A DNA stretch of 63,798 nt, counting the filler, from Octopus bimaculoides (Eukaryota), in assembly GCF_001194135.2 (NCBI RefSeq). It is 7 parts of 6 records of this genome, joined end to end, with 100 filler letters (N's around TTAATTAATTAA, not from the genome) between each part and the next. Parts side by side here need not be neighbours in the genome. Positions count along the whole stretch, not along the records: positions 44,564 to 61,568 come from NC_069003.1; 6 more parts are not named here. One strand, written 5' to 3'. How positions within the stretch are numbered: the first letter of the stretch is position 1; each line of letters starts with the position of its first letter. This document shows, piece after piece, positions 43,804 to 61,279 of this stretch. Both the position numbers and the translations under genes were made by a program. The notes beneath the pieces are model-generated. The model had not been told where the DNA came from. It saw nothing but the letters and a program-made list of their open reading frames with translations, and searched no databases.

Positions 43804-46220
43804 TCTACCTGCTTGTCAGCCCACCTACATTCTTACCTAATTAACTAACAGCCTGTATAATTAACCTAACTAGTAAGACTAGGCACGTAGTCTTCAACAT
43901 AAAGTACATGGAAGGGATTTATAAGGACAAGAACACAGTATACATTGGGGAGACCTTTACTAGTTTAGCAACGAGGCTAAATATGCACTGGAGAGAATAA
44001 AATGATGGGAAAGAGTAGTTCCCACTATCAGCATACCAAAGAGCAGCATGGTGGCACTCTTGGCCAAACTGACATCTGCATTTTGTCCAAACACCCAAGG
44101 GACCTGTCACTTCGACAAATACAAGAGTATGTCAACATAAATGAAACATTAGCCATACTGAATAAAAAATACATGTAGGAGGTAGAGATACCTCAATCTC
44201 AAAGGTATCATCCATGCAGTGTGCATACATAGGTGCATCTGAGTGGACAGGTAGATAGGTAGGTAGGTTGGTGGGTGGGCGGGTAGGTGGGTAGGTAGGT
44301 AGGTAGCTGGCTGGTTGGTAGTTAAGTAGGTAGGTAGGAAGGTAGATAGATATCTTTTTATTATAGCCACACAGGGCTAAATACAGAAAATGGACAAATT
44401 ACAAAGTAGAGCTTTGGGGGGGGGATAATTTGGATCAAAAGGGATCGCGGGAAGAAAAGAAAANNNNNNNNNNNNNNNNNNNNNNNNNNNNNNNNNNNNN
44501 NNNNNNNTTAATTAATTAANNNNNNNNNNNNNNNNNNNNNNNNNNNNNNNNNNNNNNNNNNNNACAATGTCAATCAAAAAATAAGCAATCACATTATATT
44601 AATCCAGAAGCTACAAGATAATTTCTGATGAATTCAAAACAATGCGAATAAATAAGTATTACATTTTACAGAATAATCTGAATGCTAAAGGGTTAATATG
44701 TTAACATAAGGGTTTCGAATAAAGCATCTATAAAATTAGTTTTTAAGCTTCAAGTGGCAATGGGGGTCAATCAGAATAAAATAGTAATCAAAGGGGTCCA
44801 GAAGCAAAAAAAAAAAAAAAAAAATGACTGAGAACCACTGATTTATATTAACTCCAGGAATATATTTTTCTGCTTGTTTTTTTCATTTTTGCTTTCATAA
44901 ATACGTAATGTTTATTTATTCATCATGTTTATTTATTTATGGTCATACTAGAACAGTGCTTGTATCCTCATCATTATCATCATCATTGTTTTGATGTGTG
45001 GTCCATTCATGTGTGATGTACGTGACTGTCAGAAACAAAGATTATGAAGTGTCTGAGATGTAATTCTTGAATGTTTTCAAAAATTGTATCAATTGATTGT
45101 TCACAATGAAGTTTAAGTACCCAGGCAAGAATTAAGCAAAAAATTTTTGGAAGGATCCCAATGAATGTGACTTAAGTGTTGCAGGAATATTTGGTAGTTC
45201 CAAAACACCAAAGAATCAAAACCAGATTGTTAGATTGTGACAACCAAGATTTTGTTAGCAATCAATGACCTCTGTACATGACTGATCAATCAGACCTCTG
45301 GCCAAGATCACTAAATCAATACAAATGTGATTTGCTCAATTATTAATGTTATCAAGGAACACTGACCACTCAAACCTATGGTGAAACAGGATGTCATCAA
45401 CAACTTTTTTGTCATTGACAGAAACAAAGTACAGAATTCATTTGTGACTAGCAAGTAGTGGTGAGATAGACATGCCATGCTGCAAGACCAACCACTCACC
45501 CTACTGTCATTCTCAACATACAAAATACCCCATAAACTGTTGAGCTGCCTTTTTTGTCTTGGTGAAAACAGTTTTCCATTATGGCTCATGATGACAATAC
45601 ATAGTCTTAACGACAAAATAAATATTTTTGTATTAGTTGATCACAGGTCAACCAAAATGTTTCATGGGTGACTGACTGACTTATTCATGAATGCATACCG
45701 AAAGTAATGTGTCATTTTCAGCAGTTTACAGACAAAACTAAATGCATGGTTTTAGTGACAGAGAAAATATGATGTTATATTATAAAAGAGAAGCAGATCT
45801 CTGTCTGTCCGTCACAACATGTGTAAGAGCGAAAGGGGGGAAGAATGAGTATACATTACAACTTATTTTTAGAAGGAGAGGTGAATAACTTGTCATTCAG
45901 AGAGAAACACAGTGAAAGAGAGAAAGTATGTGATAGATAGATAGATAGATTGTTGTCACCATAATAATAAGTTTTGATTTAAAACGTGAGAATTTTTAGT
46001 ACAAGTCTGTCAACACAACACGCTTCAAAAGTAGCACATACAAATATATGATGTTATTTGTGTGTGTGTGTGTGTGTGTATATGTTTCTGTAAACATATC
46101 TGACAATGGAGAAATATTACCTTCCTTGAAAACAGATGAAGGCAGTTGGCATTCAATCATAGAAAATCTGCCTCAACAAATTCTGTCTGACCCATGCAAA
46201 TGGATGTGATGATGATAATG

Positions 46221-46320
46221 ATGAAAATAGTGGTCGAAAATAATGTTCGAATAAATAACTACATATTTGATGCCTTCACTTTAACTGCTGTTGTATATAA
46301 TGTGTATATATTATATATAG
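46221..46320 (+). CDS. Candidate first exon (leader/signal-like) of putative Ig-like GPI-anchored protein
   Basis: Open frame MKIVVENNVRINNYIFDAFTLTAVVYNVYILYI ending at phase-1 donor G|GTATTA; further in-frame ATGs back to 46200. It implies a short 52-nt intron, so it is tentative. Confidence 0.35.
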
Positions 46321-46372
46321 GTATTAATTACTAATTATTCTAATTATGTTGGAATAATAGATCTTTTTACAG

Positions 46373-46429
46373 ATTCGAGTGTTTTTGCAGATTGGAGAGT
46401 TAAGAAATCTTGTAAAATCTTACAAAGTG
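46373..46429 (+). CDS. Candidate 57-nt exon 2 of putative Ig-like protein
   Basis: TCTTTTTACAG| (D)SSVFADWRVKKSCKILQS G|GTAAAT; phase 1-1; splices in frame to the 48428 exon. Confidence 0.5.
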
Positions 46430-47089
46430 GTAAATATATTTAAAAACCCTTTTTTTCTTTTTAAACTGGACACTTTATTTTCAATTCTGTCTTCTGTCTT
46501 TTACTCTTCTTCACTCATAGTTTTTAATCCCATTCTATCTTTATGTGGTGAGTGATGGACAAGGCTGGAGGTGCAGTTGATGGAAAATTTGAGTACGGAG
46601 AAGGGCTATGGTAAGAGAGAGAGAAGTTAAGGGAATAATGTAGGTGTAGGAGGGGTAGATCGGGAGATTTAGGGTTACATATGGGTGGCTACAGTGACTG
46701 GAGCATGATCATGGATATGAGTGGGAGCTGAGGATGAGGGCAGATATGTGAGGTGTTAAGATGAAGTAAGGCAAAGACGAGAGAAGAAGGTAAATGAAGG
46801 CATAGAAAGGATGCGATCAGTGAAGATGGTATGGGAAAAGGAAGGAAGGATAATGGAAATAAGGAGTGGAAGTTGTTCTGGTGGAGGGAGGTAAGTGGCA
46901 GCACAAAGAAAACGGTGTGGAGTAATATGCGCCAGTTCTGTTTCCGAGTGAATACAGCCACTGTGTAGTGCCATAGATAGAGGAGTGATGGAGTAACTGG
47001 GTGTTAGAGGAATGAGGTGTGGGTAATGCTTGAAGAGGCAGAATGGGTTACAAGCACAAACAGAATGAATTTTGGATATTGTATTTTGC

Positions 47090-48335
47090 TGTGATGGACA
47101 GCTCTTTGTGGGCACAGTGAATTGCCAATCATCTCGGTCCTTTGTCATGTCTTCTGTGAAGCTCAACGTGTTGAGATCAACCTTTACTTCTTCATCCCAT
47201 GTTTTCCTCTTCTACAAGTTCCATCCACTTTAAGTACTTCTTGAAGCAGCTGTCTTCATCCATACGCATCACATGACCAAACTAGTCCAGTCTTCTTATC
47301 TGTACACTACATCTACTTCCTGTTATGTTTACTCTCTCTCTCTCAATAATTTAGCACTTTGTTTTCTATGCACACTGATATTGCCCATTCGATAAAGTAT
47401 ACTTTATTCTTCTCTAGTCTTTGCTTATCCTCTGCATTCAGGGTCCATATCTCCCTACCATGTAGCATTGCTGATCGTACACAAGCATCATATTTTCTCT
47501 CTGAGAGAAATTTATTGCTAACAGAGATTATAACTTCCAGAACTTTCTCCATCCTATTCCTATTTTGGCAGCTATATTTTCAGAACATCCTCCTCCACTG
47601 TTAATTAGGTCACCTAGGTAACAGAAACTTGGAATTTATTGTGTCTCCTTAATATTCAGTGCACTTATGCATCTTGTTACTTGTTACCCTAATTTCTGTG
47701 TTCACCTTCCTGTCATTCCACTTCCCCTCTTCTGTGTCCATAGCATGCATTAGGTATATAACCTTTCCTGCATATTGAGCAGGATCATTTATCTGATGGG
47801 TGTGAGGTCCTGTCTGTTTTCCTGCTTGCTAGAACTTTGATTTTTGCCAAGTTAACTTTAAGGCCTTTTGACACCAGCTTTTGCTTCCATACCTGAAATT
47901 TCTTTTTTCAAATACCACTGCAGATTCCACTCTGAAAATGAGCTCATTAGCATATAGTAGTTCCCAAGGGCAGCTAGTATTAAATTCCTCTGTTGTGACC
48001 TAGAGGACAGTGATTAAGAAGAGGGAAGTGAGAACTGAGCTCTGGTGCACATGTAGATCTACCCAAAGTCCATTGCTGTACTCATGACCACCTCCCACCT
48101 GACTGATAGTACCCCTGTACATGGCTTGTTTGGCTTTCACAAGCCATGTACCTCTAGCTTCTTTAAAGACCACCTCATCCCAGAGTAGGAGAGTATGTTG
48201 AAGGCTCTCAGGTCCAACAAATGCCACCTACAATGGCTTACTTTTAGCTAAATACTTCTCTTGCCTTTGTGTTACTAAGAAGATGGCATCTGTATTACTT
48301 CTTCCTGGCACAAAACCAAAGATCATGCGAGTGAG
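47090..48335 (-). mobile_element. Degenerate RTE LINE RT fragment
   Basis: FGFVPGRSNTDAI, KAFVGP, YDACVRSAMLHGREIW and WFGHVMRMDEDSC-like pieces. Confidence 0.8.
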
Positions 48336-48427
48336 TGGTGGGTTCTAAAGACAATGAATCTGTTATGGGTGATTAAGTTGTATCCTATTCTGCCAGTGAA
48401 TAATAATGGTTTACTTCTTTATTTCAG

Positions 48428-48727
48428 AACCAGTGGAATTGGGACAAAGCGTACTTCTTAGAACTGAAGAAATTCCTAATCTAACAATTCCCTTTCACTG
48501 GGAATGTGGACCCAAAAGGTTTCAATGTGAAATAACATGCCTTAATCACAGCCATTTTAAAGTTACAAATAATGGTAACAGTTCTACTTTATGGATGTGG
48601 AAAGTAACAAAAGAGTGTTTAAAATTGGACTTCATTCAGGGCGATTACGACATTCTAGGAACAGTTGAAATACAGTTAAAGACTACTACTGCTGCTACTA
48701 CTGCTAATGCGACTGCTGCTACTTCAG
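48428..48727 (+). CDS. Ig-like domain plus Thr-rich stalk exon of uncharacterised cell-surface protein
   Basis: TTACTTCTTTATTTCAG| (E)PVELGQSVLLRTEEIPNLTIPFHWECGPKRFQCEITCLNHSHFKVTNNGNSSTLWMWKVTKECLKLDFIQGDYDILGTVEIQLKTTTAATTANATAATS G|GTATTA. Exactly 300 nt, phase 1-1; complex non-repetitive sequence with 4 Cys, Trp, N-glycosylation sequons and a beta-strand pattern. Confidence 0.62.
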
Positions 48728-48759
48728 GTATTACTACTACTACTACTACTATTAATAAT

Positions 48760-48980
48760 AATACTCCTTTCTATTAAAAGTGCAAGGTCTGAAATTTTGT
48801 TGAGAAAGGACTAGTTGATTACATCCAACCCCAGTGTTTCACTGGTACTTAATTTATCGACCCCAAAAGGATGAAAGGCAAAGTTGACCTCGGTGGAATT
48901 TGAACTCAGAATGTAGCAGGAGATGAAATACCGCTAATCATTTCACTCAGCGTGCTAACAATTCTGCCAGCTTTCCACTT
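48760..48980 (-). mobile_element. tRNA-derived SINE family B
   Basis: Reverse copy whose (AAT)n tail abuts the Thr-codon run after the Ig-like exon. Confidence 0.85.
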
Positions 48981-49179
48981 TAATAATTATAATAATTACA
49001 TTAATTGTTGTTCTTTATTGGCCGTGTTTACAATATAAATTGGCAACCCTTTGCTTTCACCATAGCCCTTGAATACATTGTCTTTGTCTCAATTAAGATA
49101 ATTGTTATTATTTAACTGGGGTTTGGATCATAAATTAGCATAGAATTATCATGGAAAGTTTTAATCTAGATCACTTTAA

Positions 49180-49398
49180 CCCTTTTGTTACCATACTTGT
49201 TGAAACACACTGCCTTTGTTTCAATTAATTTTGTAAACACTGAAGAATTTAGTCAAATAATTTTGTCATTATTAAGCTAGTGTTTGAAACGTAAATTTAC
49301 AAGAAATTTTGATGGAAGAAAGTTTTGAGATCCCTTTAAAACAAGAAATTTGTACCATAGAAACAAAAGCAGTTTTAAACAAGTTGGTATCAAAAGGG
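49180..49398. mobile_element. piggyBac-like MITE
   Basis: TTAA|CCCTTTTGTTACCA ... TGGTATCAAAAGGG|TTAA: TIRs and TTAA TSD. Confidence 0.8.
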
Positions 49399-49450
49399 TT
49401 AAGCCTGGTAGATATTACTATTTTTTATTAAAAATAGTAATATCTACCAG

Positions 49451-49527
49451 GTTTTGCATCAGGAACCAGCCTCATCCTTTTCATTGCGATTCTAGTTGCT
49501 GTCATCTTGCAACTATGGAATATATAG
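49451..49527 (+). CDS. Candidate terminal exon, copy 1 (GPI-signal-like hydrophobic tail)
   Basis: CAG|GT completes Gly; GFASGTSLILFIAILVAVILQLWNI-TAG; phase-compatible with the Ig exon. No polypyrimidine tract, and the acceptor lies in a hairpin. Confidence 0.4.
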
Positions 49528-50922
49528 AAATGGTATTTTCTATTTTATTTTGATATTGGTCAGCTCTTTAATAGACTTATACTGTTTTCAGTCGGCATAA
49601 TTACTTTTAACATAAATTATGTTTTATGCATCATCATAATCATCGTCATTGGTTTACCTTTGCTTTTCCCAAAACTCTGCTCCAACTTACTCTGGCCTGA
49701 TCAATGCAATCATAGAAGAAAAAATTGGTGTTAAAACCATTCCACCAATGGTGATTTCTGCTGGAACACTCTGCTTTTGTTTCAATTAATTTTGGAAATA
49801 ACAAAGAATATTTTGGTTTGAAGTCTTAGCACAAAACCAGCAATATCAGAGGAGGTGGGTATCAGTCAATTACATTGACCCCAACACTCAACTGGTACTT
49901 AACTTATTGACCCTGAAAAGATGAAAGGTAGAAAATAGACTCCGGAGAAATTTGAACTTGCTGGCTTTTTGTCCAGCTCTTTACATTCTAAATGTCTTGC
50001 TCCGTGTGCTGGTAGTTCTGCCTACTCACCCCTTCCATGACAGAACTGTAACAAACCCGTCATATACACACACACACATATATGTACATATATATATATA
50101 TATATTTTATTATATGTATTTATTTTCTCCTAATTAATAAATAACACGGACAAAATAAATTGGTTAATAGATACCAGGGTAGCAAAGATCACAAAATGAC
50201 TGTGGTGTAACTCCTGTTTATGAGGTAGAAACTCCTTGATATTTTGGGTACTTGAGTATATATAAATTTAATGAATGGAGTAAAACGCATATTTTAACTG
50301 CATACTTTAATTTCCNNNNNNNNNNNNNNNNNNNNNNNNNNNNNNNNNNNNNNNNNNNNNNNNNNNNNNNNNNNNNNNNNNNNNNNNNNNNNNNNNNNNN
50401 NNNNNNNNNNNNNNNNNNNNNNNNNNNNNNNNNNNNNNNNNNNNNNNNNNNNNNNNNNNNNNNNNNNNNNNNNNNNNNNNNNNNNNNNNNNNNNNNNNNN
50501 NNNNNNNNNNNNNNNNNNNNNNNNNNNNNNNNNNNNNNNNNNNNNNNNNNNNNNNNNNNNNNNNNNNNNNNNNNNNNNNNNNNNNNNNNNNNNNNNNNNN
50601 NNNNNNNNNNNNNNNNNNNNNNNNNNNNNNNNNNNNNNNNNNNNNNNNNNNNNNNNNNNNNNNNNNNNNNNNNNNNNNNNNNNNNNNNNNNNNNNNNNNN
50701 NNNNNNNNNNNNNNNNNNNNNNNNNNNNNNNNNNNNNNNNNNNNNNNNNNNNNNNNNNNNNNNNNNNNNNNNNNNNNNNNNNNNNNNNNNNNNNNNNNNN
50801 NNNNNNNNNNNNNNNNNNNNNNNNNNNNNNNNNNNNNNNNNNNNNNNNNNNNNNNNNNNNNNNNNNNNNNNNNNNNNNNNNNNNNNNNNNNNNNNNNNNN
50901 NNNNNNNNNNNNNNNNNNNNNN

Positions 50923-50961
<39 letters not shown>

Positions 50962-51124
50962 ATACATACATATACATATATACAAATACATATATAAACA
51001 TATACATAAAAATGAATAAATAGAGTCAAGAAGGAGTAGGTTTAAACAGCTATTTAATAAACACTACACATGTTTTGATACAACATGGATCCACATATAT
51101 ACAGGATTTAAATTAAACAATGTC

Positions 51125-51460
51125 TTACCTGTATAATGGGTGAACGAGCTCTATAATGTAGTCCCCTTCAAGTACCCCTACGTATTTGTAGCTCTCTGCT
51201 GGTACTAACTCTTTTATGACATTCTGCTGGTCAAGGTTAACGTTATATGTTTCTGTCATTTTTCCTTTGATAAAGGTAGCTTTTGCACATTTATTGAGGC
51301 CAAATTGCATCCTGATGTCATCACTGAATTGTTTAACAATCACTAGTAAGCCCTTGAAGTGTTGGTCATTTTTTGCAAAGAGCTTTAAATCATCCATGTA
51401 AATAAGATGATTTATATTTTTATCAAACATTTTATAACTGTACGGTGCATCGTTGAGCAC
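51125..51460 (-). mobile_element. R4/Dong-like reverse transcriptase fragment
   Basis: INHLIYMDDLKLFAK...FSDDIRMQFGLNKCAK...YKYVGVLEG (RT domains 5-7). Confidence 0.8.
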
Positions 51461-51958
51461 AGTACGGTTTGCCTGCACAAAAGAAGGTCTACTTCCAATA
51501 AATATTAATAACATTAGAAACACTTATACTACCCTATAGTAGCACAAATAACCCCACAGCATACAAATAGTAGCCCCTGATAGTAAAATGTAGGTTATAC
51601 AACTTACTCCTTAATTTATAGTTTGTCTTGTTAGGAATTACCGAGGCTCTTGTAGGTATTCAAATAAACAACCCCTCCTCTTACCCTGTTTCTAAATTTA
51701 AGATGTTACCCCCCACCCCACCCATATCAACTACCTACTTCTTATACCAATTTGCCTTTCCCCCATTTTATCATCACTTAACCCCTTGTATTAATGCTTG
51801 TTATTTCTATCATAACTTATCTGAGAACACAAAGGCCTTAGGTTTTCTACCATATAGTCTTTTACCCCTAATAACTACTTCAAATCCTCAATTTTATTTC
51901 AATTTTAGCCTTTCCTATCTTGTTCATTTCTTTTTATTTATTTTATTTTTTTTTGCAG

Positions 51959-52035
51959 GTTTTGCATCAGGAACCAGCCTCTGCATTTTCATTGCAATTC
52001 TAGTTGCTGTCATCTTGCAACTATGGAATATATAG
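51959..52035 (+). CDS. Candidate terminal exon, copy 2 (GPI-signal-like hydrophobic tail)
   Basis: Long T tract + GCAG|GT; GFASGTSLCIFIAILVAVILQLWNI-TAG; near-identical to 49451-49527, and the similarity continues about 90 nt past the stop. Confidence 0.42.
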
Positions 52036-52534
52036 AATGGTATTTTCTATTTTATTTTGATATTGGTTAGCCTTTTAATAGACTTTTACTGTTTTCAGTC
52101 GACATAATTACTTTTAACATAAGCACCTTTTATACCACGGATGTATTTGTCGGTACTTGCTGGAATTTGGACCTCCACTCTCTGCCCTTCTCCCACTTTA
52201 AATGGACATTAATATCCCTACATATTTGGGAACAATGTTACCCCCTTGTTTGATTTATTCATCTTATTTCACTTTATTTGTTTTTTATTATATGTTATAT
52301 TTCTCTTTATTTTATTGTACTCTATGTCCACCCTCTCCCACCATACATTGTATGTATCTGCTTGCTTTTGGTACTATGCAACTACCGACAAATACATCCG
52401 TGGTATAAAAGGTGCTTATGTTAAAAGTAATTATGTAGACTGAAAACAGTAAAAGTCTATTAAAGGGCTTACCAATATCAAAATAAAATTTAAAAAAAAA
52501 AAAAATTTGATGTACTATGTAGCACTAATGAAGG

Positions 52535-52862
52535 TGCATGGCTCAGTGGTTAGAGCGTCAAGTTTACGATTGTGAGGTGGTGAGTTCGAATCCTGGACCG
52601 GGCTGCGTGTTGTGTTCTTTAGCAAGGCACTTTATTCCACGTTGCTCCAGTTCACTCAGCTGTAGAAGTGAGTTGCGACATCGCAGGTGCCAAGCTGTAT
52701 CGGCCTTTGCCTTTCCCTTGGATAACACTGGGGGCATGGAGAGGGGAGACTGGTGTCCATGGGTGACTGCTGGTCTTCCATAAACAACCTTGCCTGGACT
52801 TGTGCCTTGGAGGGTAGCTTTCTGGGTGCAATCTCATGGTCAGTCATGACCAAAGTGGGTCT
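52535..52862 (+). mobile_element. tRNA-derived SINE family C
   Basis: GCATGGCTCAGTGGTTAGAGC (A box), GAGTTCGAATCC (B box), GTGTTCTTTAGCAAGGCACTT central domain. Confidence 0.8.
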
Positions 52863-54169
52863 CAGTATGTAGAACTGTAAGTGTAGCCTATTGATTGAAA
52901 TAGTTTGTCTGCACCCACTTAGAGTTAATATATTATTTGATTATAATTTTTAAATTATTAGATTTATTAATAGGAATAATCTGATTTTAGGGTAATGTAA
53001 TATAAGCACAGCCTGTTGATATACCTTTGTTTATGATTTTTAATGATTAGATTTAATTATCTTAGGGTATTTGTTATTGTTTTTAAGTATGTTCAGTAAA
53101 TTGTTTCAATTAAAGAAACTTCACTCACAGTACTAATTTACCAGTGGACCTGTTATTAACTGTACCCATATATTACCAATATACTCTTTTAAGTTGTTTT
53201 ACAATGATAGGAACTATATAATCTTAATGACTATGTAATGCTTATCTAATATATAAATCCCATTCTGTCTATCAGTGTTTTGTGCGCTTATAACTTGAGT
53301 ATTGTCCATCCGATCACACTGAAATTTTAAACCACTTTAACTAACTGTAATCAACCACATGTATTTACGGTCAAATATGTTCTTACGGCTGTTTTCCGTG
53401 CGATAAACCAACTGACACGAAAAACTACTGGGAAAAGGCAGTTACAAAACAAGTGAAAATTTAAAAAAAACAAAAAAACATTACTGGCCATTGCTCCATT
53501 TTCTGAATATATTCTCAACAAAATTCAATTGAAAATAAAAAAAGATTAACTCATTGCTTATAAAACATGAAAANNNNNNNNNNNNNNNNNNNNNNNNNNN
53601 NNNNNNNNNNNNNNNNNNNNNNNNNNNNNNNNNNNGGGGGGTACGTCTAAAATCTTACCTAATGTTTCTCATCCAACTTTAAAAAAATAAATAGTATTGT
53701 TTAATTTTCAAAATAAAATTGATTTACAAAGAAAATGCCTTATGTTATTTATTGCACATTGTGTTATTTCAGCCCTGAGTTTCAACTCCTTTTGTGTCAG
53801 TTTTTGAGAGAAGGGAGACTTTCCTAAGCATTTTTGCACCTTTATTGCGTAGCAATTTCTGTTTGCCTGTCCATCAGGTTATTAAAACTTCCATTTATAT
53901 TTTTATTCGAATCTAATGTTACTTATCCCGTAGTTCTTACTGCTACGCCAGTGAAAATCAAAATAAAATACATAAAGCAACAGTCATCAAATGTAAAAGC
54001 CAAAGAACTGTTTATTGCTTAAATATCACTTGCAATATTCACTTTGGAGATAAAACAGTGTTCAGTCTGACGTATATGTGTCAACATGAGGTATGTACTA
54101 TGGAAGAGTACATTGCGCTTATCCTAATGTGAAAAGTGTTTGAGTGCAAAAAGTTTAAGTTTAATGATG

Positions 54170-54957
54170 GCCGTTGCCAGTACCGCCTGACTGGCCTTCG
54201 TGCGGGTGACACGTAAAAGCACCCACTACACTCCCTGAGTGGTTGGCGTTAGGAAGGGCATCCAGCTGTAGAAACTCTGCCAAATCAGATTGGAGCCAGG
54301 TGTAGCCATCTGGTTTCACCAGTACTCAGTCAAATCGTCCAACCCATGCTAGCATGGAAAGCGGACTTTAAACGAAGATGATGATGATGTCCAATTCCAC
54401 TGGAAGTTGTATATATTGTGGACTGAACAGCTTTCCTTCATTTTATTGGCCTCTTGACAATTTTGCAATGGTTCACTGGGTTAAGATTCACAATCAATCA
54501 ATTTTCATTATTTGATGACTGGCACCCATGCCAACGTCGTCTCCTTCATTGGACACGAAACTCAGCTTGCGAAGACTTATTGGGGCAAGCGAAAGCAAAA
54601 TCGGGATGGCACCTGTGCCCAGCATCACCTTTCTGGCACTTGTGCTCGCGGCATGTGTAAGGACTTTCGAGCGAGAAAGTTGCCAGTGCCCCTGGACTGG
54701 CTCATGTGCGGGTGGCACATAAAATACACCATTTTGAGTGTGGCCGTTGCCAGTACCGCCTGACTGGCCTTCGTGCGGGTGGCACGTAAAAACACCCACA
54801 ACACTCTCGGAGTGGTTGGCATTAGGAAGGGCATCCAGCTGTAGAAACTCTGCTTAAACAGATTGGAGCCTGGTGTAGCCATCTGGTTTCACCAGTCCTC
54901 AGTCAAATCATCCAAACCATGCTAGCATGGAAGGCGGATGCTAAATGATGATGAATC
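54170..54957 (+). mobile_element. Two RTE 3' tails in tandem
   Basis: GTTGCCAGTACCGCCTGACTGGCC...GGAAGGGCATCCAGCTGTAGAAACTCTG...(GAT)n appears at 54170-54390 and again at about 54480-54957. Confidence 0.85.
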
Positions 54958-55206
54958 CCTGCTTTCACTAATTCAGTATATCATTTGCAACAGATTCTGT
55001 GTCAGATGAGCTATGAAATTAATGATACTTTTTTGTGTCTTTGCTAAAACTTTATATCTGGAAATATATATATATATGTACACACGAGTGTGAAATGAAA
55101 AACCAGAACAGAATTTGCATATGTTTATAAAAAAATATATTTCCATATAAATGATTGCAAAGGGAAATTTAATTAAAATCAATATAAATGTATATCAATT
55201 AATTCA

Positions 55207-55484
55207 CTATGATTGTGTTTCTTCCGAATCTTTCTTGTCGTTTTGTTTATAAGCAAGGAGATGGTGTCCTCCATTGTACATACACCGTATTTTTTGATAC
55301 ATAAAGCAAAAGAAAAAGAGGAGGTTATCATATTCCCCGTGGTACTCGTCGCTGATAAAATATGTATGGTAATCCCGTAGAAAATAGTAGATTGCTTCAA
55401 CCGTACTCAAATAGGTGTTCGGTTTGTCCCGCTGGTGGCGCCAGAACTTGGTGTGCCTGGTTTTCATCTCTACACAACGAATTC
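55207..55484 (-). CDS. DTWD1: DTWD1 terminal coding exon 4
   Basis: TTTCTTCTCTTACTAG|GA completes Gly; [34 protein letters not shown]...YDNLLFFF...TQS-TAG. The four exons total 903 nt (300 aa plus stop). Confidence 0.95.
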
Positions 55485-55739
55485 CTAGTAAGAGAAGAAA
55501 GAAAAACAGGAGATGTATATATGTATGTACATATGTTTGAAGCTCTGAAGAAGCAACAGGGCGATACACAAGTACTCAACTGTGAGTGCACTGCATCTTA
55601 TAGCTGAAACAACTAAAAGCTAATGAAGTTCATATCATAACTGTTCATTCTTTTGTCATCTCAGTTTATTATATATATATATATATATATATTGGTACCC
55701 GTGCTGGTGGCACGTAAAAAGCACCATCCATATGTTCTT

Positions 55740-56139
55740 CAACCATAGATCCAACTTTTGGACAAACATTCCCATCTTCAAGATGAACTCTGTGACAGTG
55801 CAGTTGGGCCCTTGAAATGACAGGTTTAAGTGGTTAAGGGCTCCAAAAATGTCTGGCAGGAAGGCCAATAAGAAAATTATGGGCATGAAAGTAGCAAATC
55901 ATTGTTAGATTACCTCGTGTAAGGCAGTAAACATTTTAATGAAGAAAATATTAACTTGTAATGGCATGCTTGCCTCGCTAGAACCCAGTCAGCCTCCACC
56001 CAGCCTAGAGAGAACAAAGACATGCACCAGAAACCAAACAAGCAACTGTCATTTTATACATGCGTGCCCCTCAAGGTCATACATAGCATCAGGCGTACCA
56101 CCTGGAAAGCCCTCGCATACCACTGGTTGGGAATCACTG
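55740..56139 (-). mobile_element. hAT/Buster-like transposon remnant in DTWD1 intron 3
   Basis: LAFLPDIFGALNHLNLSFQG...FVQKLDLW transposase motif; terminal CAGTGATTCCCAACCAGTGG at 56139. Confidence 0.7.
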
Positions 56140-56297
56140 GTCTACAGGATCAGAGCCAACCAATAAAAACAATGAAGAATTCCTCTACGTGGTCGTTTGT
56201 TCTCCTAGCAGTAGCAGTCAAGTCTCCCTCAAATCACAACCTAATGTCTAAAGTAAAGAAAGTGGGGCACTGGATAATGTAATTTTACATATATGCG

Positions 56298-56458
56298 CAG
56301 GAGTGGCTGCGTGGTAAGTTGCTTGCTTACCAACCACATGGTTCCGGGTTCATTCCCACTGCGTGGCACCTTGGGTAAGTGTCTTCTACTATAGCCTTGG
56401 GCTGACCAAAGCTTTGTGAGTGGATTTGGTAGACGGAAACTGAAAGAAGCCCCTCGTA

Positions 56459-56503
<45 letters not shown>

Positions 56504-56725
56504 ATGTATATGTTTGTGTGTCTGTGTTTGTCCCCCCAGCATCGCTTGACAACTGATGCTGGTGTGTTTACGTCCCCGTAACTTAGTGGTTCGGCAAAAG
56601 AGACCGATAGAATAAGTACTAGGCTTACAAAGAATAAGTCCTGGGGTCGATTTGCTCGACTAAAGGCGGTGCTCCAGCATGGCCACAGTCAAATGACTGA
56701 AACAAGTGAAAGAGTAAAGAGAGAA
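56298..56725 (+). mobile_element. tRNA-derived SINE family A in DTWD1 intron 3
   Basis: Near full-length copy. Confidence 0.9.
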
Positions 56726-56871
56726 AAGAGTATATTCTGAAAAAAGAAAATATAGAGACATGATGGTCAAGGCTGGAATGCTTTTGATTGTAGGTTTGCT
56801 CAATTAAAGTTGATCTGAGGCTAAATAACAACAACAACTTAATGGTGTCTATGATGATGATGATTATTTAC

Positions 56872-57193
56872 CTTTTAGACGATCGTCTTTAGAAATTTGG
56901 TTGGTTTGGTTCCATGTACTGTCAATGAAGATTACCCTTTCAAATGGTGCCACGGACAGTTTAGTGTATTTTCTACAAGGAGTTGGAGAATTTGCTGAAT
57001 CAGATTTCCTCTTTGTAGCTTTTGTAGAATCGTTCAAACCATTTGTAGGATCTTCATTGTTAAATTGGGCATTTGGTTTGTCCCCATTTTCATGTTGAGA
57101 ATCTGAAGAAGTCTGTGGATTGGAGATGCACCCAGCAGCAGCCTTTAATTCTTCAAGTGTGACAGACTCAGGACCAGGGAAAACCAAAACAAC
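56872..57193 (-). CDS. DTWD1: DTWD1 coding exon 3
   Basis: CCCTAG| VVLVFPGPESVTLEEL...FERVIFIDSTWNQTNQISKDDRLK G|GTAAAT; contains the family DxTW motif; 322 nt, phase 0-1. Confidence 0.95.
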
Positions 57194-57321
57194 CTAGGGA
57201 ATATAGATTCAACCAATTTAAGTTTGTAGTGAATTGGACAACTAAATGACTGACCGAACAACCTACTGTCCATCTGTTCATCCACCCATTTTTTCCATCC
57301 ACTATCCCTGAGAGGAATATA

Positions 57322-58050
57322 TCATCATCATCATCGTTTAACGTCCGCTTTCCATGCTAGCACGGGTTGGACGATTTGACTGAGGACTGGTGAACCAGAT
57401 GGCTACACCAGGCTCCAATCTGATTTGGCAGAGTTTCTACAGCTGGATGCCCTTCCTAACGCCAACCACTCCGAGAGTGTAGTGGGTGCTTTTACATGCC
57501 ACTGGCACGAAGGCCAGTCAGACGGTATTGGCAACGGCCACGCTCAAAATGGTGTATTTTATGTGCCACCTGCACAGGAGCCAGTCCAGCGGCACTGGCA
57601 ACGATCTCGCTCGAATGCCTNNNNNNNNNNNNNNNNNNNNNNNNNNNNNNNNNNNNNNNNNNNNNNNNNNNNNNNNNNNNNNNNNNNNNNNNNNNNNNNN
57701 NNNNNNNNNNNNNNNNNNNNNNNNNNNNNNNNNNNNNNNNNNNNNNNAATGCCTTTACACGTGCCACGGGCACAAGTGCCAGAAAGGTGACACTGGACAC
57801 AGGTGCCATCACGATTTCGCTTTCGCTTGCACCAACAGGTCTTCGCAAGCCGAGTTTAGTGTCCAATGAAGGAGACGACGTTGGCATGGGTGCCAGTCGT
57901 CGAATTTAGTTCGATTTTGATTTCACTTGCCTCAACAGGTCTTCGCAAGCGGAGTTTAGTGTCCAATGAAGGAAGGTACGCATAAGTGAGCTGGCTACAC
58001 CCCTGGATTTAGGTCTCACTTGGCTTGCTGGGTCTTCTCATGCACAGCAT
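57322..58050 (-). mobile_element. RTE 3' tail in DTWD1 intron 2
   Basis: (CAT)n-CGTTTAACGTCCGC...GGATGCCCTTCCTAACGCC; contains an N gap. Confidence 0.85.
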
Positions 58051-58065
58051 ATTTCCATATATATT

Positions 58066-58648
58066 AATTTAAAATGTGTTATGAGTATTATAAGATAAAA
58101 TCCTATATAAACCCAACTAACAGTTAAAAAAAAGATGGAGAAGGGAAGATGTTGAAAAATTTTTATAAATTTTTAATCCATACGATCGTTTCGAATGATA
58201 ATACTGATATGTAAGAAAACATGGAAAAAATTATATTAATTATAATAATAATTAAATTAAATCAATTTAATTAGGTATTACTATTCTTTTCAGTGGAAAA
58301 AATTATAAAAGATCAAAAAAGGTATTAACAAAAGAATGTTACAATAAAACTACAGACAGCCTGTGTCTGATAAAGTTGATCGGATATTCATAACAAGAAT
58401 GTGAAATAGGAAAAAATAGAGATATAGGAACATGTCTATGTAGTGTTGAGTCTATCAGTGTAAGAACTAGAACTGTTTTGGTCAACGGATATTTTTCATG
58501 CTTTCTTACATGTCAGAATTATCATTCGAAACGATTGTATGGATTAAAAATCTATAAAAACTTTCAACATCTCTTCTCTATTTTTATTAACTGTTAGTTG
58601 AGTTTATATAGGATTTTATCCTATAATACTCATAACACATTTTTAATT
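58066..58648. repeat. Fold-back element (arms 58066-58231 and 58490-58648) with degenerate hammerhead
   Basis: Arms are reverse complements (e.g. AAAATGTGTTATGAGTATTAT / ATAATACTCATAACACATTTT; CCATACGATCGTTTCGAATGATAAT / ATTATCATTCGAAACGATTGTATGG). Confidence 0.9.
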
Positions 58649-58827
58649 GTCATATTTTCATATTTTAAATACTTGCAATAGCAAGTTACTACTTTGATAT
58701 GAAAGATCTTGATAAGAAATCTAACTTTTTGGACCCCCCGCAAAAGTTCATAATGTTCTACCTAAACAAATTTTTCTCACAATTATATATTATATATATA
58801 TCATATAAATATATATANNNNNNNNNN

Positions 58828-59312
58828 CTTATGCATACCTTTCCTTCATTGGACACTAAACTCTGCTTGCGAGGACCTGTTGGGGCAAGTGAAATCAAAA
58901 TCGAAATTGAACCAAATTCGATGACTGGTACCCGTGCCAGTGGAGCTCTAACAGCACCATCCGAGCGTGATCATTGCCAGAACAGCTGTCTGGCTTCCAT
59001 GCTGGTGGCATGTAAAAAGCACCATTTGAGTGTGATCATTACCAGTGTTGCCTTACTGGCACTCGTGCCAGTGGCACGTGCAAAAACATTCGAGCAAGGT
59101 CATTGCCAGTACTGCCTAACTGGCCCTCGTGCCGGTGGCACGTAAAAGCACCCACTACACTCTCGGAGTGGTTGGCGTTAGGAAGGGCATCCAGCTGTAG
59201 AAACTCTGCCAGATCAGATTGGAGCCCGGTGCAGCCATCTGGTTCACCAGTCCTCAGTCAAATCGTCTAACCCATGCTAGCATGGAAAGCGGACGTTGAA
59301 TGATGATGATGA
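58828..59312 (+). mobile_element. RTE 3' tail in DTWD1 intron 2 (opposite orientation to 57322-58050)
   Basis: AAAAGCACCCACTACACTCTCGGAGTGGTTGGCGTTAGGAAGGGCATCC...(GAT)n. Confidence 0.85.
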
Positions 59313-59530
59313 CACACACACATATACAGGTATATACATATACAACAGGCTTTTTTCAGTTTCCAATTATCGAATTCACTCACAGGGCTCTGGTCAAGCC
59401 CAGCCTTTAGTAGAAGACATTTGCACAAGGTGCTGTCAAGTGGGACTGAATCCAAAATCGCATGGTTGGGAAGCAAACTTTTTAATCACACAGTCATGCC
59501 TATCTCTATTAATTTCTAATTAATACTTAC

Positions 59531-59668
59531 TTTGTCTTTATCATAATTTGGAACACAAGGATATGTGTAGACACTGACGTTGTCTGGTGCTAAAACGGCA
59601 GCATGGCTGGCAGTACTTTTGCCTGCACACTCACTGGGATGGCGCAGGATGTCAATGGCTATAGGCAG
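59531..59668 (-). CDS. DTWD1: DTWD1 coding exon 2 (46 codons)
   Basis: Not in the ORF track; translated by hand. TTCTTTCTTTCGACAG| LPIAIDILRHPSECAGKSTASHAAVLAPDNVSVYTYPCVPNYDKDK |GTAAGT matches the DTWD1 HPxE.GKSTA.HA..LAP block; 138 nt, phase 0-0. Confidence 0.95.
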
Positions 59669-59699
59669 CTGTCGAAAGAAAGAACAAAGACGATATTAA

Positions 59700-59875
59700 C
59701 CCTTTAGCATTGAAACCAGCCATATCTGGCCCCAAATTTTCTATTTGTTTCATGTTCAAACTGGCCAGATCTGACCTCTCACACCTATTTGACAATATCA
59801 TTGTAAAAATATACAATCCCATTACTGATATCTTGAAGCTACAAGGTAATGCCTGATTAATTCAAACCAACACTC
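59700..59875. mobile_element. piggyBac-like MITE, one end only
   Basis: TTAA|CCCTTTAGCATT terminus; the matching family end AATGCTAAAGGG|TTAA occurs at about 44680-44695. Confidence 0.6.
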
Positions 59876-60419
59876 TTTTACTTGTTCAGTGTGTGTGTAT
59901 GTTTGTGCGTCTGTGTTTTTCCTCCAACATTGCTTGACAACCGATGCTGGTGTGTTTACGTCCCCGTAACTTAGCGGTTCGGCAAAAGAGACCGATAGAA
60001 TAAATACTAGGCTTACAAAGAATAAGTCCTGGGGGCGATTTGCTCGACTAAAAGGCGGTGCTCCAGCATGGCCACAGTCAAATGACTGAAACAAGTAAAA
60101 GAGTATATGTGTTAAGACTGGTCCTTCTGGTGGTGCCACATGTAAAAGTACCCCACCCTTGTGACATCACATAATAACAACTGTGTGGTGTCACATGAAA
60201 GTACCTGTGTGGTGCCATGTAAAAGCGCCTATGCAGTACCATGTTAAGGCACCCAGCACACGCTGGTTGGCATTAGGAAGGACATCCAGCTGTAGAAACC
60301 ATGCCAAATCAGACTGGAGTCTGGTGCATCCTGCTGGCTTGCCAGCTCTGGCCACACCATGCCAGCTTGGACAACGGACGTTGACTGAAAGAAAATATGT
60401 AAAGATGTGATTGATTTAC

Positions 60420-61269: not shown

Positions 61270-61279
61270 AATAATAATA

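What the first reader, a model, noticed from the sequence alone, without database searches (positions are those of the whole stretch)
46221..52035. Hand-assembled unannotated-looking gene: small Ig-like, Thr-stalked, GPI-type surface protein
Seen: exons 46221-46320, 46373-46429, 48428-48727 and 49451-49527 (or 51959-52035) join through three phase-1 GT-AG introns into 534 nt (177 aa) with no stop. The layout is hydrophobic leader, SSVFA|DW cleavage-like site, about 85-aa domain with 4 Cys (ELGQSVLL, WEC, C-x3-C, NSSTLWMWKVTKEC), Thr/Ala stalk, small residues SGFASGTS, then a hydrophobic tail ending at the stop. Established: symmetrical phase-1 exons of about 100 codons are typical of Ig-superfamily modules, and small-residue omega site plus hydrophobic C-terminus is the GPI signal. 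Inference: a lineage-specific receptor or adhesion/immune-type protein that the ORF track shows only as a fragment. The first and last exons are the weak parts.
Basis: partly seen in the sequence, partly recalled or inferred. Interest (0 to 1): 0.75.

Follow-up and report, generated by a model that had tools for sequence, protein, structure and literature searches.

The report
Fast-evolving octopus Ig-like surface protein gene
This is a real gene, cut off at its 5' end by the piece's edge, for a small cell-surface glycoprotein with one antibody-like domain; it belongs to an undescribed family found only in octopods, and its domain exon has changed faster than the surrounding introns.

Summary

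- **Orthologue:** exon 3 (48428-48727), the terminal exon (49451-49527, or its copy 51959-52035) and exon 2 up to its donor (46429) match Octopus sinensis LOC115223473. Splice sites are conserved, and the same DTW-domain gene lies downstream.
- **Exon 1:** The real signal-peptide exon should lie about 345-380 bp left of the piece edge (44564).
- **Exon 2 acceptor:** an 18-nt tandem duplication left two in-phase acceptors, 46373 and 46391.
- **Family:** a profile search found 27 related protein clusters. All 20 that were looked up are octopod.
- **Fold:** AlphaFold2 gives pLDDT 91.7. The best Foldseek matches are Ig V domains, but the canonical B-F disulfide is absent and no Pfam Ig model passes threshold.
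- **Evolution:** the domain exon is 19% diverged against 8.4% for introns (p = 2e-7), yet the reading frame is intact.
- **Anchor:** GPI or tail-less transmembrane; untested.
- **Assembly gap:** it lies between the two terminal-exon copies, in non-coding DNA.

The parts
46391..46429 (+). Exon 2, core 39-nt form (phase 1 to phase 1). It encodes (x)WRVKKSCKILQS, the start of the domain (family motif Y-K-I-x-Q).
   Evidence: Aligns with O. sinensis exon 2, L001 12706-12744, with an identical donor context CAAAGTG|gtaaatat. Exon 2 is also 39 nt in O. bimaculoides paralogue LOC106881157. Adding these residues raises the family-HMM score from 75 to 85 bits.
46373..46390 (+).
   Evidence: The acceptor ATCTTTTTACAG|A at 46361-46373 is 13/13 identical to the O. 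sinensis acceptor. Sequence alone cannot choose between the two acceptors.
46362..46397 (+). 18-nt tandem duplication (TCTTTTTACAGATTCGAG / TGTTTTTGCAGATTGGAG, 15/18 identical) that duplicated the exon-2 acceptor.
   Evidence: Read directly from the sequence. O. sinensis has a single copy.
48428..48727 (+). Exon 3 (300 nt, phase 1-1). It encodes the V-like Ig domain (to 48681) and the Thr/Ala stalk (48682-48727).
   Evidence: Splice sites conserved with O. sinensis and at the same position as in the O. bimaculoides paralogue. Family HMM 75-85 bits. AF2 pLDDT 91.7. Foldseek best matches are Ig V domains.
48503..48681 (+). Hyperdivergent part of the domain (strand C end, C', C'-D region, E-F and F-G loops): 44/179 nt differ from the orthologue.
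   Evidence: pN is 0.265 against 0.084 divergence in introns (p = 3e-10). The first 75 nt of the exon differ at only 5 positions.
48682..48751 (+). (ACT)n-type trinucleotide array. It encodes the Thr/Ala stalk and runs through the exon-3 donor into the intron.
   Evidence: Tandem Repeats Finder, period 3, 23 copies. The stalk is 15 aa here and 21 aa in O. sinensis.
48728..48777 (+). Read-through of the exon-3 donor to a stop (…TSGITTTTTTINNNTPFY*). This is a possible anchor-less, secreted isoform made by intron retention.
   Evidence: ORF 48406-48777. O. sinensis isoform X1 (P0002) is the same kind of retained-intron product.
49451..49527 (+). Terminal exon, copy a (GFASGTSLILFIAILVAVILQLWNI*). 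It sits at the ancestral position but has a weak polypyrimidine tract.
   Evidence: The upstream flank 49336-49434 is 96% identical to the sequence just upstream of the O. sinensis last exon.
51959..52035 (+). Terminal exon, copy b (GFASGTSLCIFIAILVAVILQLWNI*). It has a strong polypyrimidine tract and keeps the SLCI motif of O. sinensis.
   Evidence: About 95% identical to copy a over roughly 168 nt (D9/D10). Aligns with L001 18064-18153, including the T-tract.
50316..50922 (.). Assembly gap between the two terminal-exon copies. It is non-coding (last intron or downstream DNA).
   Evidence: Flanked by TA/CA microsatellites at 50063-50139 and 50923-51023. No exon lies within 789 nt of it.

Best explanation
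**Identity (shown).** The locus is the orthologue of Octopus sinensis LOC115223473, truncated at its 5' end by the piece edge. It belongs to an undescribed, octopod-restricted family of surface glycoproteins.

**Gene plan**
- A signal-peptide exon lies outside the piece, about 345-380 bp left of 44564 (inferred from collinearity).
- A 39-nt or 57-nt exon 2 follows.
- One phase-1/phase-1 exon encodes a divergent V-like Ig domain plus a Thr/Ala stalk. The stalk is encoded by an (ACT)n coding microsatellite.
- A short terminal exon encodes small residues (SGFASGTS) followed by 18 uncharged hydrophobic residues that run to the stop.

**Domain (predicted)**
- It lacks the canonical B-F disulfide.
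- It has a near-invariant C-x3-C pair in the C' region. A second pair (W-x-C at the end of strand C, and a Cys before strand F) is gained and lost together across the family.
- A sequon at N61-S-S is shared by 19 of 31 domain copies.

**How it most likely works (inferred)**
- The protein enters the secretory pathway and is N- and O-glycosylated.
- It is held on the outer face of the cell on a mucin-like stalk. The anchor is either GPI (my estimate about 0.6) or a tail-less transmembrane helix.
- Retention of the intron after exon 3 would give a soluble form.
- It probably acts as a recognition or adhesion module. The ligand-contacting surface would be the rapidly changing C-C'/E-F/F-G part, since that part has diverged about three times faster than the introns while the A-B strands and the G strand stay conserved.

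**Not known.** The ligand and the tissue of expression.
For: **Orthology and synteny**
- The only close homologue is O. sinensis XP_029649930.1, 56% identical.
- Its locus is collinear with the piece and is followed by the same DTW-domain gene on the opposite strand.
- Splice sites of exons 2, 3 and 4 are conserved.
- An O. bimaculoides paralogue has the same four coding exons, all in phase 1.

**Family**
- A profile search of 1.84 billion representatives gave 27 true hits with 1-4 tandem domains.
- All 20 clusters looked up are from Octopus or Argonauta.
- An HMM built without self or orthologue scores the window at 85 bits.

**Fold**
- AF2 gives pLDDT 91.7, pTM 0.83 and 8 strands.
- The Foldseek PDB matches listed are nearly all antibody V or nanobody chains (TMq 0.48-0.66; 7 with E <= 1e-3, best 4.7e-4). 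Many of the viral-library hits that carry a name are Ig-like proteins.
- Ten of the 11 weak PDB sequence hits are Ig domains.
- Sub-threshold I-set hits recur across the family.

**Disulfides**
- C44 is present in 31/31 copies and C48 in 30/31.
- C37 and C74 are both present in 13 copies, both absent in 14, and discordant in 4 (p = 5e-5).

**Coding status**
- The ORF is intact.
- All 3 coding indels are multiples of 3, against 4 of 24 in introns.
- The simulated chance of acquiring no stop codon at the observed divergence is 0.08.

**Accelerated evolution**
- The exon-3 domain differs at 49/254 nt, against 249/2952 in introns (p = 2e-7).
- In 48502-48681, pN is 0.265 against 0.084 in introns (p = 3e-10).
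- dN/dS is 1.5 overall.

**Anchor**
- The hydrophobic run reaches the stop, with no basic residues, in the window, in O. sinensis X2 and in paralogue LOC106881157.
Against: - **No expression evidence.** There are no transcript data for the window's species. Neither the 123-aa ORF nor any near-identical protein is on record.
- **Derived residues at conserved sites.** The window copy is the only one of 31 domain copies with Leu at the near-invariant Trp77. It has Cys for the common Tyr in Y-K-I, which gives an odd number of Cys. It carries the derived residue at 8 strongly conserved sites, against 2 for O. sinensis. This could mean decay.
- **dN/dS is not significantly above 1** (nonsynonymous vs synonymous p = 0.38). 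Synonymous divergence is also somewhat raised (0.185 vs 0.084, p = 0.065). Gene conversion or a local mutational effect could therefore contribute.
- **Ig assignment rests on prediction.** No Pfam Ig model reaches threshold, and none hits the window protein at all. TM-scores are about 0.5-0.66, not higher.
- **GPI signal not evaluated** by any predictor. Many paralogues have true cytoplasmic tails.
- **Exon 1 cannot be inspected.**
Confidence: 0.75

Rival explanations
1. The window's copy is a decaying or silent gene. It is orthologous to a functional O. sinensis gene but is no longer under protein-level constraint in this lineage, and the ORF survives by chance.
For: - dN/dS is 1.5.
- The near-invariant Trp77 is lost and Tyr5 has become Cys. 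The window carries 8 derived changes at conserved sites, against 2 for O. sinensis.
- The family-HMM score is lower than for the orthologue (85 vs 102 bits).
- The exon-2 acceptor and the terminal exon are duplicated, and a retroelement fragment sits next to the gene.
- There is no transcript evidence.
Against: - Neutral drift cannot exceed the neutral rate, yet the exon diverged 2.3-3 times faster than the introns.
- There is no stop codon in about 130 codons (simulated chance 0.08). All coding indels are in frame, against 4 of 24 in introns.
- All four domain Cys, Trp35, the sequon and every inspectable splice site are intact.
- AF2 folds the window sequence itself with high confidence.
Confidence: 0.15
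2. Exon 1 at 46221-46320 supplies the start codon and the leader, so the gene lies wholly inside the piece.
For: - The junctions are GT-AG and in phase, and the joined frame is open.
- The donor TAG|GTATTA is acceptable.
Against: - The O. sinensis locus has no homologue of this segment, although the flanking intron sequence is 86-93% identical.
- The orthologue and the paralogue both start with a short M(N/D)(I/L)LRN... signal exon placed 3 nt after an acceptor (cag|ATCATG), 2.7-3.2 kb upstream of exon 2.
- There are 25 equivalent ATG...GT phase-1 candidates in 1.8 kb, and 5 further in-frame ATGs upstream.
- The peptide has Asn-interrupted, Tyr-rich hydrophobicity, unlike the family's signal peptides.
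Confidence: 0.04
3. The excess exon divergence comes from ectopic gene conversion with paralogous domain exons, or from a local mutational process. It is not diversifying selection on a binding surface.
For: - Synonymous divergence in the variable segment is also raised (0.185 vs 0.084 in introns, p = 0.065).
- The family is multi-copy, so donor sequences exist.
- In residues 36-86 the two orthologues are no more alike (49%) than either is to some paralogues (42-54%).
Against: - No sampled paralogue is closer to the window than the orthologue across residues 36-86 as a whole (best 44%). In the 59-86 sub-segment three paralogues marginally exceed it (48% vs 46%).
- The known paralogues looked up sit on other chromosomes or contigs.
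- Divergence is concentrated in nonsynonymous changes (38.7 nonsynonymous vs 6.3 synonymous).
- Only 50%-identity representatives were sampled, so this test is weak.
Confidence: 0.15
4. The C-terminal hydrophobic segment is a tail-less type I transmembrane anchor, not a GPI attachment signal.
For: - Most paralogues have a homologous G-S-G-T-S...hydrophobic segment followed by a K/R-rich cytoplasmic tail, so they are true TM proteins.
- The window's run GTSL(I/C)…LQLWNI spans 18-21 residues, long enough to cross a bilayer.
Against: - No residue follows the hydrophobic run, and there is no basic stop-transfer flank.
- The O. sinensis orthologue's run is only 11-14 residues, too short for a stable TM helix.
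- Small residues (A/S/G) lie 7-11 positions upstream, as at omega sites. This is judged by eye from established GPI-signal rules.
Confidence: 0.4

Closest known systems
Octopus sinensis LOC115223473 (XP_029649930.1 isoform X2; XP_036368504.1 isoform X1), annotated 'uncharacterized protein'
   Same: - It is the positional orthologue: collinear introns (91.6% identical) and the same downstream DTW gene.
- Exon boundaries and phases are the same.
- The layout is the same: signal, domain, Thr stalk, hydrophobic end.
- It also has a retained-intron isoform.
   Different: - Protein identity is only 56% (64% within the domain).
- There is a 4-residue indel in the F-G loop, the stalk is 6 residues shorter here, and the stop is shifted by 5 codons.
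- The window has a duplicated exon-2 acceptor and a duplicated terminal exon.
- Leu replaces Trp77 and Cys replaces Tyr5.
Octopod paralogue family (for example O. sinensis LOC115225115, LOC115229017, LOC115225372; O. bimaculoides LOC106867739, LOC106881157, LOC106869802; Argonauta hians GAB1602345). Unnamed, with no Pfam entry.
   Same: - Same ~95-aa domain, with consensus Y-K-I-x-Q...V-L-G...P-N-M-K-R-P-V-x-W-x-C...Y-E-C-D-x-T-C...Y-K-V-T-Q-x-G-N-x-S-T-L-W-I...C-L-x-W-x-F...G-x-I-x-L-x-I.
- Same phase-1 exon plan in the paralogue examined, and the same G-S-G-T-S motif before the anchor.
   Different: - Many paralogues have 2-4 tandem domains, real cytoplasmic tails or an extra Cys-rich module.
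- Many O. sinensis paralogues sit together on one 21-Mb contig.
- This gene has a single domain and lies on another chromosome, next to the DTW gene.
Immunoglobulin superfamily V/I-set domains (Pfam V-set PF07686, I-set PF07679)
   Same: - Predicted beta-sandwich whose best structural matches are antibody V domains.
- Conserved Trp in strand C.
- An L-x-I...V-T motif before strand F.
- The domain is encoded by a single phase-1/phase-1 exon.
   Different: - There is no B-F disulfide. Ile or Thr and Phe occupy those positions, and the disulfides are C-to-F and C-x3-C instead.
- No Pfam Ig model reaches its gathering score. The best family member scores 23.6 vs 23.7 bits, and the window itself has no hit.
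Thy-1/CD90, and the squid Thy-1-like glycoprotein Sgp1 (Williams, Tse & Gagnon 1988, Immunogenetics 27:265, pmid 2894353; reference seen in PMC2189447)
   Same: The working analogy is a very small surface glycoprotein made of one V-like Ig domain, heavily glycosylated, with a lipid-type C-terminal anchor signal. The Sgp1 paper (by its title) puts Thy-1-like glycoproteins in cephalopods.
   Different: - No sequence similarity was detected to Thy-1 or to any PDB chain.
- No non-octopod protein appeared in the exhaustive profile search.
- The Sgp1 sequence was not at hand, so a direct comparison was not made.
- Thy-1 has the canonical disulfide and no Thr stalk.
CD8 / CD7-type receptors (V domain on an O-glycosylated Thr/Pro stalk)
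   Same: Architecture: one V-like domain held away from the membrane on a Thr-rich, presumably O-glycosylated stalk.
   Different: Those receptors have transmembrane and signalling tails and canonical Ig disulfides, and there is no homology. This is an analogy from general knowledge, not a test.

Membership tests
Octopod LOC115223473/LOC115225115-type domain family (unnamed) | Significant match to the domain profile built without the query or its orthologue | tested here: met
   85 bits (exons 2+3) and 75 bits (exon 3 alone) against the 29-sequence HMM.
Octopod LOC115223473/LOC115225115-type domain family (unnamed) | Invariant C-x3-C pair and Trp35; co-varying Cys37/Cys74 pair | tested here: met
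   The window has W35, C37, C44, C48 and C74. Family counts: C44 31/31, C48 30/31, W35 30/31.
Octopod LOC115223473/LOC115225115-type domain family (unnamed) | Near-invariant Trp in strand F (C-L-x-W-x-F) | tested here: not met
   The window has Leu (CLKLDF). 29 of 31 copies, including the orthologue, have Trp.
Octopod LOC115223473/LOC115225115-type domain family (unnamed) | Gene plan: signal exon, 39-nt exon, domain exon and anchor exon, with all introns in phase 1 | tested here: met
   Exons 2-4 match O. sinensis and O. bimaculoides LOC106881157. The signal exon lies outside the piece.
Octopod LOC115223473/LOC115225115-type domain family (unnamed) | N-terminal signal peptide | not testable with these tools
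   The orthologous exon lies about 345-380 bp left of the piece edge. tblastn finds no copy inside the piece.
Immunoglobulin superfamily (V/I-set) | Ig-type beta-sandwich fold | tested here: met
   By prediction only. AF2 pLDDT 91.7 with 8 strands. Foldseek probability 1.00 to antibody V domains, TMq 0.48-0.66.
Immunoglobulin superfamily (V/I-set) | Canonical intersheet disulfide between strands B and F | tested here: not met
   There is no Cys in strand B (SVLLRT). Phe79 sits at the strand-F position in 28/31 copies.
Immunoglobulin superfamily (V/I-set) | Match to a curated Ig sequence model above its threshold | tested here: not met
   The window has no Ig hit at E <= 10. Across the family, I-set hits 6/31 and Ig_3 4/31, all below gathering score. 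PDB profile hits to titin, obscurin and CD2 have E of 0.05-0.4.
Immunoglobulin superfamily (V/I-set) | Domain encoded by one exon flanked by phase-1 introns | tested here: met
   48428-48727 is 300 nt and phase 1-1.
GPI-anchored proteins | Hydrophobic segment at the extreme C-terminus with no cytoplasmic residues | tested here: met
   LILFIAILVAVILQLWNI* or LCIFIAILVAVILQLWNI*. The same end-type is seen in O. sinensis X2 and LOC106881157.
GPI-anchored proteins | Omega site (small residues at omega and omega+2) followed by a 5-10 residue spacer | tested here: inconclusive
   By eye only. In A-A-T-S-G-F-A-S-G-T-S, omega could be Ala with omega+2 = Ser and a 7-residue spacer. The O. sinensis equivalent is less clear (Tyr and Pro nearby). 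No NetGPI, PredGPI or big-PI was available.
GPI-anchored proteins | Release by PI-PLC, or a chemically demonstrated anchor | not testable with these tools
   Requires an experiment.
Thy-1 / squid Sgp1 | Detectable sequence homology | tested here: not met
   For Thy-1, there was no hit in the PDB sequence searches. No non-octopod protein appeared in the library-wide profile search. Sgp1 itself was not compared directly.

The most novel reading that the evidence does not exclude
The gene could belong to an octopod-only system of variable surface recognition molecules. This would be a tandemly expanded family of non-canonical V-like domains whose exposed C-C'/F-G face is under diversifying selection. 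It could serve immune-type non-self recognition, or the self or conspecific recognition of octopus skin and suckers. Anchored and secreted isoforms would be made by intron retention.
Probability: 0.08. Interest if true: 0.85.

Novelty: new variant of a known kind. Interest (0 to 1): 0.45.

Why it matters
- **A possible recognition family.** Octopods have no antibodies, and little is known about their cell-surface recognition repertoire. Here is an octopod-restricted, multi-copy family of small Ig-like surface proteins that no paper in the searched library describes and that has no Pfam model. At least one member has changed its domain exon about three times faster than the neighbouring introns. 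That makes it a candidate for host-pathogen, gamete or self recognition.
- **Annotation.** A Pfam-style model of this domain would turn about 30 'uncharacterized' octopod proteins into a named family.
- **Ig fold evolution.** The domain is a natural case of an Ig-like sandwich that has swapped the canonical disulfide for two other pairs.
- **Practical limit.** For this window the gene cannot be completed, because its first coding exon lies beyond the piece edge.

Tried and rejected
only noise, DUF3262 at E = 0.9.
- **PDB sequence search with the two-sequence profile:** nothing meaningful.
- **Exact look-ups:** O. sinensis isoform X2 and the window's 123-aa ORF are both 'not on record'. This gave no transcript or genome context for the window's species.
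- **Exon 1 inside the piece:** tblastn with MNILRNCLFLVCI found nothing better than E = 17-32.
- **Second domain copy:** none in the piece or in the O. sinensis locus.
- **Haplotype-duplication artefact for the two terminal exons:** rejected as the simple explanation. Similarity covers only about 168 nt, stops well short of the gap on both sides, and the copies differ by about 5%. A real small duplication around a lineage-specific insertion (49616-51936, with a reverse-transcriptase fragment) fits better, but the mechanism is unexplained.
- **Gene-conversion donor:** none among the sampled paralogues at protein level across the whole variable segment.
- **Literature:** searches for the LOC identifiers, for octopus lineage-specific IgSF expansions and for cephalopod-specific orphan membrane proteins found no description of this family.
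- **False positive:** P0030, a bacterial repeat protein in the profile search, was discarded.

Full report
**1. Checking the observation**

The same holds with the alternative last exon. The piece (44564-61568) is 37% G+C and has four internal N runs.

The gap inside the finding (50316-50922) was examined first.
- It is bordered by TA/CA microsatellites at 50063-50139 and 50923-51023.
- It lies 789 nt downstream of terminal-exon copy a and 1036 nt upstream of copy b. No reading frame runs into it.
- A model ending in copy a never crosses it. A model ending in copy b crosses it inside an intron.
- Continuity across the gap cannot be tested by comparison, because 49616-51936 has no equivalent in the related genome.

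**2. An orthologue fixes the gene structure**

The only close protein in a 5.8-billion-sequence database is Octopus sinensis LOC115223473, 'uncharacterized protein', at 56% identity over 140 residues.
- Isoform X2 is 154 aa.
- Isoform X1 is 181 aa and reads through the donor after the domain exon.

Its locus (L001) is collinear with the piece and is followed by a DTW-domain gene on the opposite strand. The window has DTW exons in the same place, at ORFs 56864-57187 and 60309-60584 on the minus strand. This is therefore the positional orthologue.

| O. sinensis coding exon (L001) | Content | Window equivalent |
|---|---|---|
| 10001-10040 | MNILRNCLFLVCI + 1 nt | outside the piece |
| 12706-12744 | 39 nt | 46391-46429 (or 46373-46429) |
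| 16454-16783 | domain + stalk | 48428-48727 |
| 18086-18145 | hydrophobic tail | 49451-49527 or 51959-52035 |

All introns are in phase 1.

- **Exon 3** has both splice sites conserved base for base.
- **Exon 2** shares the donor context CAAAGTG|gtaaatat.
- **Terminal exon** aligns with both window copies.
- **O. bimaculoides paralogue LOC106881157 (L002)** has the same plan, including a 39-nt exon 2 and an ATG placed 3 nt after an acceptor (cag|ATCATG).

**3.

*Exon 1 (46221-46320) is a chance ORF.*
- The surrounding stretch 45348-46322 has no counterpart in O. sinensis, although the intron sequence on both sides is 86-93% identical.
- It ends in TA-rich low complexity.
- Five more in-frame ATGs lie at 46194-46218.
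- It is one of 25 ATG...GT phase-1 candidates in the 1.8 kb upstream.
- Collinearity starts at the very first base of the piece: 44564 equals L001 10383. That is 343-382 nt downstream of the orthologous signal exon, so the real first coding exon lies just outside the piece.
- tblastn finds no copy of it inside the piece.

*The exon-2 acceptor is duplicated.* The 18-mers 46362-46379 (TCTTTTTACAGATTCGAG) and 46380-46397 (TGTTTTTGCAGATTGGAG) are a tandem repeat, 15/18 identical.
- The downstream acceptor restores the 39-nt exon seen in O. sinensis and the paralogue.
- Both are in phase 1, and sequence alone cannot decide between them.

*The terminal exon has two copies*, about 95% identical over roughly 168 nt (D9/D10).
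- Copy a keeps the ancestral upstream flank. Positions 49336-49434 are 96% identical to O. sinensis. Its polypyrimidine tract is poor.
- Copy b keeps the T-tract and the ancestral SLCI residues.
- Between them lies a block specific to the window's lineage. It holds the gap and a reverse-transcriptase fragment at 51125-51523 on the minus strand.

**4. A family, restricted to octopods**

A profile of the two orthologous domains was searched against 1.84 billion representative proteins. It gave 27 genuine hits and one bacterial false positive.
- Members carry 1-4 tandem copies of a ~95-aa domain behind a signal peptide.
- They end in a transmembrane segment with a basic tail, or in a hydrophobic segment that runs to the C-terminus.
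- All 20 clusters looked up come from O. sinensis, O. vulgaris, O. bimaculoides or Argonauta hians. All but one are named 'uncharacterized' or 'hypothetical'. P0026 is named 'zinc finger protein 239-like' and is probably a merged gene model.
- Many O. sinensis paralogues share one 21.3-Mb contig.
- An HMM built from 29 domain copies, without the window or its orthologue, scores the window's exon 3 at 75 bits. With the exon-2 residues added it scores 85 bits. This independently supports the 46429/48428 junction.
- Literature searches found no description of the family.

**5. Fold and disulfides**

No Pfam model covers the window protein. Family members give only sub-threshold I-set or Ig_3 hits; the best is 23.6 bits against a gathering score of 23.7.

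With the 31-sequence alignment A5, AlphaFold2 gives mean pLDDT 91.7, pTM 0.83 and eight strands.
- Foldseek against the PDB returns almost only nanobody and antibody V domains (probability 1.00, TMq 0.48-0.66, best E = 4.7e-4).
- Many of the named hits in the viral library are Ig-like proteins.
- Ten of eleven weak PDB sequence hits are Ig domains: titin, obscurin, myotilin, CD2 and scFv.

The domain is therefore an Ig-like V/I-type sandwich by prediction, but a non-canonical one.
- Strand B has no Cys, and Phe79 sits where the strand-F Cys would be.
- C44 and C48 (C-x3-C) are present in 31/31 and 30/31 copies.
- C37 (after the strand-C Trp) and C74 (before strand F) are both present in 13 copies, both absent in 14, and discordant in 4 (Fisher p = 5e-5, not corrected for phylogeny). 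This points to C37-C74 and C44-C48 disulfides, which is an inference.
- The sequon at N61-S-S occurs in 19/31 copies.
- The Thr/Ala stalk is an (ACT)n array at 48682-48751 that continues into the intron. Its length differs between the species.

**6. Mode of evolution**

| Region (window vs O. sinensis) | Differences | Divergence |
|---|---|---|
| Introns | 249/2952 | 8.4% |
| Exon-3 domain | 49/254 | 19.3% (Fisher p = 2e-7) |
| 48428-48502 | 5/75 | 6.7% |
| 48503-48681 | 44/179 | 24.6% |

- In the variable part (codon range 48502-48681), pN is 0.265 (p = 3e-10 vs introns). pS is 0.185 (p = 0.065 vs introns).
- Overall dN/dS is 1.53 over 130 codons. On its own this is not significantly above 1.
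- The ORF is nevertheless kept. The simulated chance of acquiring no stop codon at this divergence is 0.08.
- All three coding indels are multiples of three, against 4 of 24 in introns.

A rate above the intron rate cannot come from relaxed constraint alone. It needs positive selection, gene conversion or a local mutational effect.
- No sampled paralogue looks like a conversion donor across the variable segment. Only 50%-identity representatives were available, so that test is weak.
- At strongly conserved family positions the window carries 8 derived residues, including Trp77 to Leu and Tyr5 to Cys. O. sinensis carries 2.
- Some loss of constraint in this lineage therefore remains possible.

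**7. Mechanism proposed**

*Shown:*
- orthology and gene plan;
- family membership;
- the predicted Ig-like fold;
- a stalk encoded by a repeat;
- a hydrophobic C-terminal end;
- accelerated exon divergence.

*Inferred:*
- The protein is secreted into the ER and is N- and O-glycosylated.
- It is displayed on the cell surface on a mucin-like stalk.
- The tail has no cytoplasmic residues and no basic flank. It is only 11-14 hydrophobic residues long in O. sinensis. I therefore favour a GPI signal (about 0.6) over a tail-less transmembrane anchor. No predictor was available.
- Read-through of the exon-3 donor (ORF 48406-48777) would give a soluble isoform, as in O. sinensis X1.
- The fast-changing C-C', E-F and F-G segments are the likely ligand-contacting surface of a recognition or adhesion molecule.
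- The ligand and the tissue of expression are unknown.

**8. Comparison with what is known, and verdict**

The gene works like a Thy-1- or CD8-type small V-domain surface glycoprotein. [quoted passage not shown] 1988, pmid 2894353; reference seen in PMC2189447). No sequence relationship to any of these was detected.

It is a member of an unnamed octopod family. It is an IgSF domain only at the level of predicted fold, and fails two classical IgSF criteria: the canonical disulfide and a curated sequence model.

The novelty lies in the family (an octopod-only, non-canonical Ig-like domain with accelerated evolution), not in the gene as such, because its orthologue is already annotated. Interest is moderate.

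Noticed in passing
window 55064-61052, minus strand (ORFs 56864-57187 and 60309-60584): Exons of a DTW-domain gene (Pfam DTW, E = 2.4e-6 for 56864-57187). They are collinear with the 302-aa DTW gene downstream of the O. sinensis orthologue. This served as the synteny anchor.
   Followed up: partly
window 51125-51523, minus strand: Reverse-transcriptase fragment (RVT_1, E = 2e-6; YMDDL motif). It lies inside the window-specific block 49616-51936 that separates the two terminal-exon copies and has no O. sinensis counterpart.
   Followed up: partly
window 49536-49615, 52043-52160 and 52378-52495: The 3' flank of the terminal exon occurs three times. The third copy is inverted (118-nt arms, 95% complementary, 217 nt apart), forming a potential hairpin just after exon 4b. 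Its origin is unexplained.
   Followed up: no
window 54168-54954, 57321-57615, 59097-59312, 60264-60345: Several direct and inverted copies of a roughly 220-nt SINE-like repeat. Many copies also occur in the O. sinensis locus.
   Followed up: no
window 46362-46397: An 18-nt tandem duplication created two in-phase acceptors for exon 2. It is absent from O. sinensis.
   Followed up: yes
window 52529-52864: A stretch 90% identical to L001 25600-25937, which in O. sinensis lies inside the DTW gene. Here it sits between the surface-protein gene and the DTW gene. It is either a repeat or a small rearrangement.
   Followed up: no
P0026 (O. sinensis XP_036358517.1, 'zinc finger protein 239-like'), residues about 194-273: A copy of the octopod domain is fused behind C2H2 zinc fingers in this annotated protein. 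This is probably a merged gene model.
   Followed up: no
P0019, P0020, P0022, P0025, P0028, P0029 (Octopus and Argonauta): A subset of the family has a second, different Cys-containing module after the domain (KPKIE...C.Y.V.A.CS.P.T.I.C...). It was not characterised.
   Followed up: no
L001 9990-10003 and L002 about 2325-2340: In both the O. sinensis orthologue and an O. bimaculoides paralogue, the start codon sits 3 nt after an acceptor (cag|ATCATG). This implies a conserved upstream 5'-UTR exon.
   Followed up: partly
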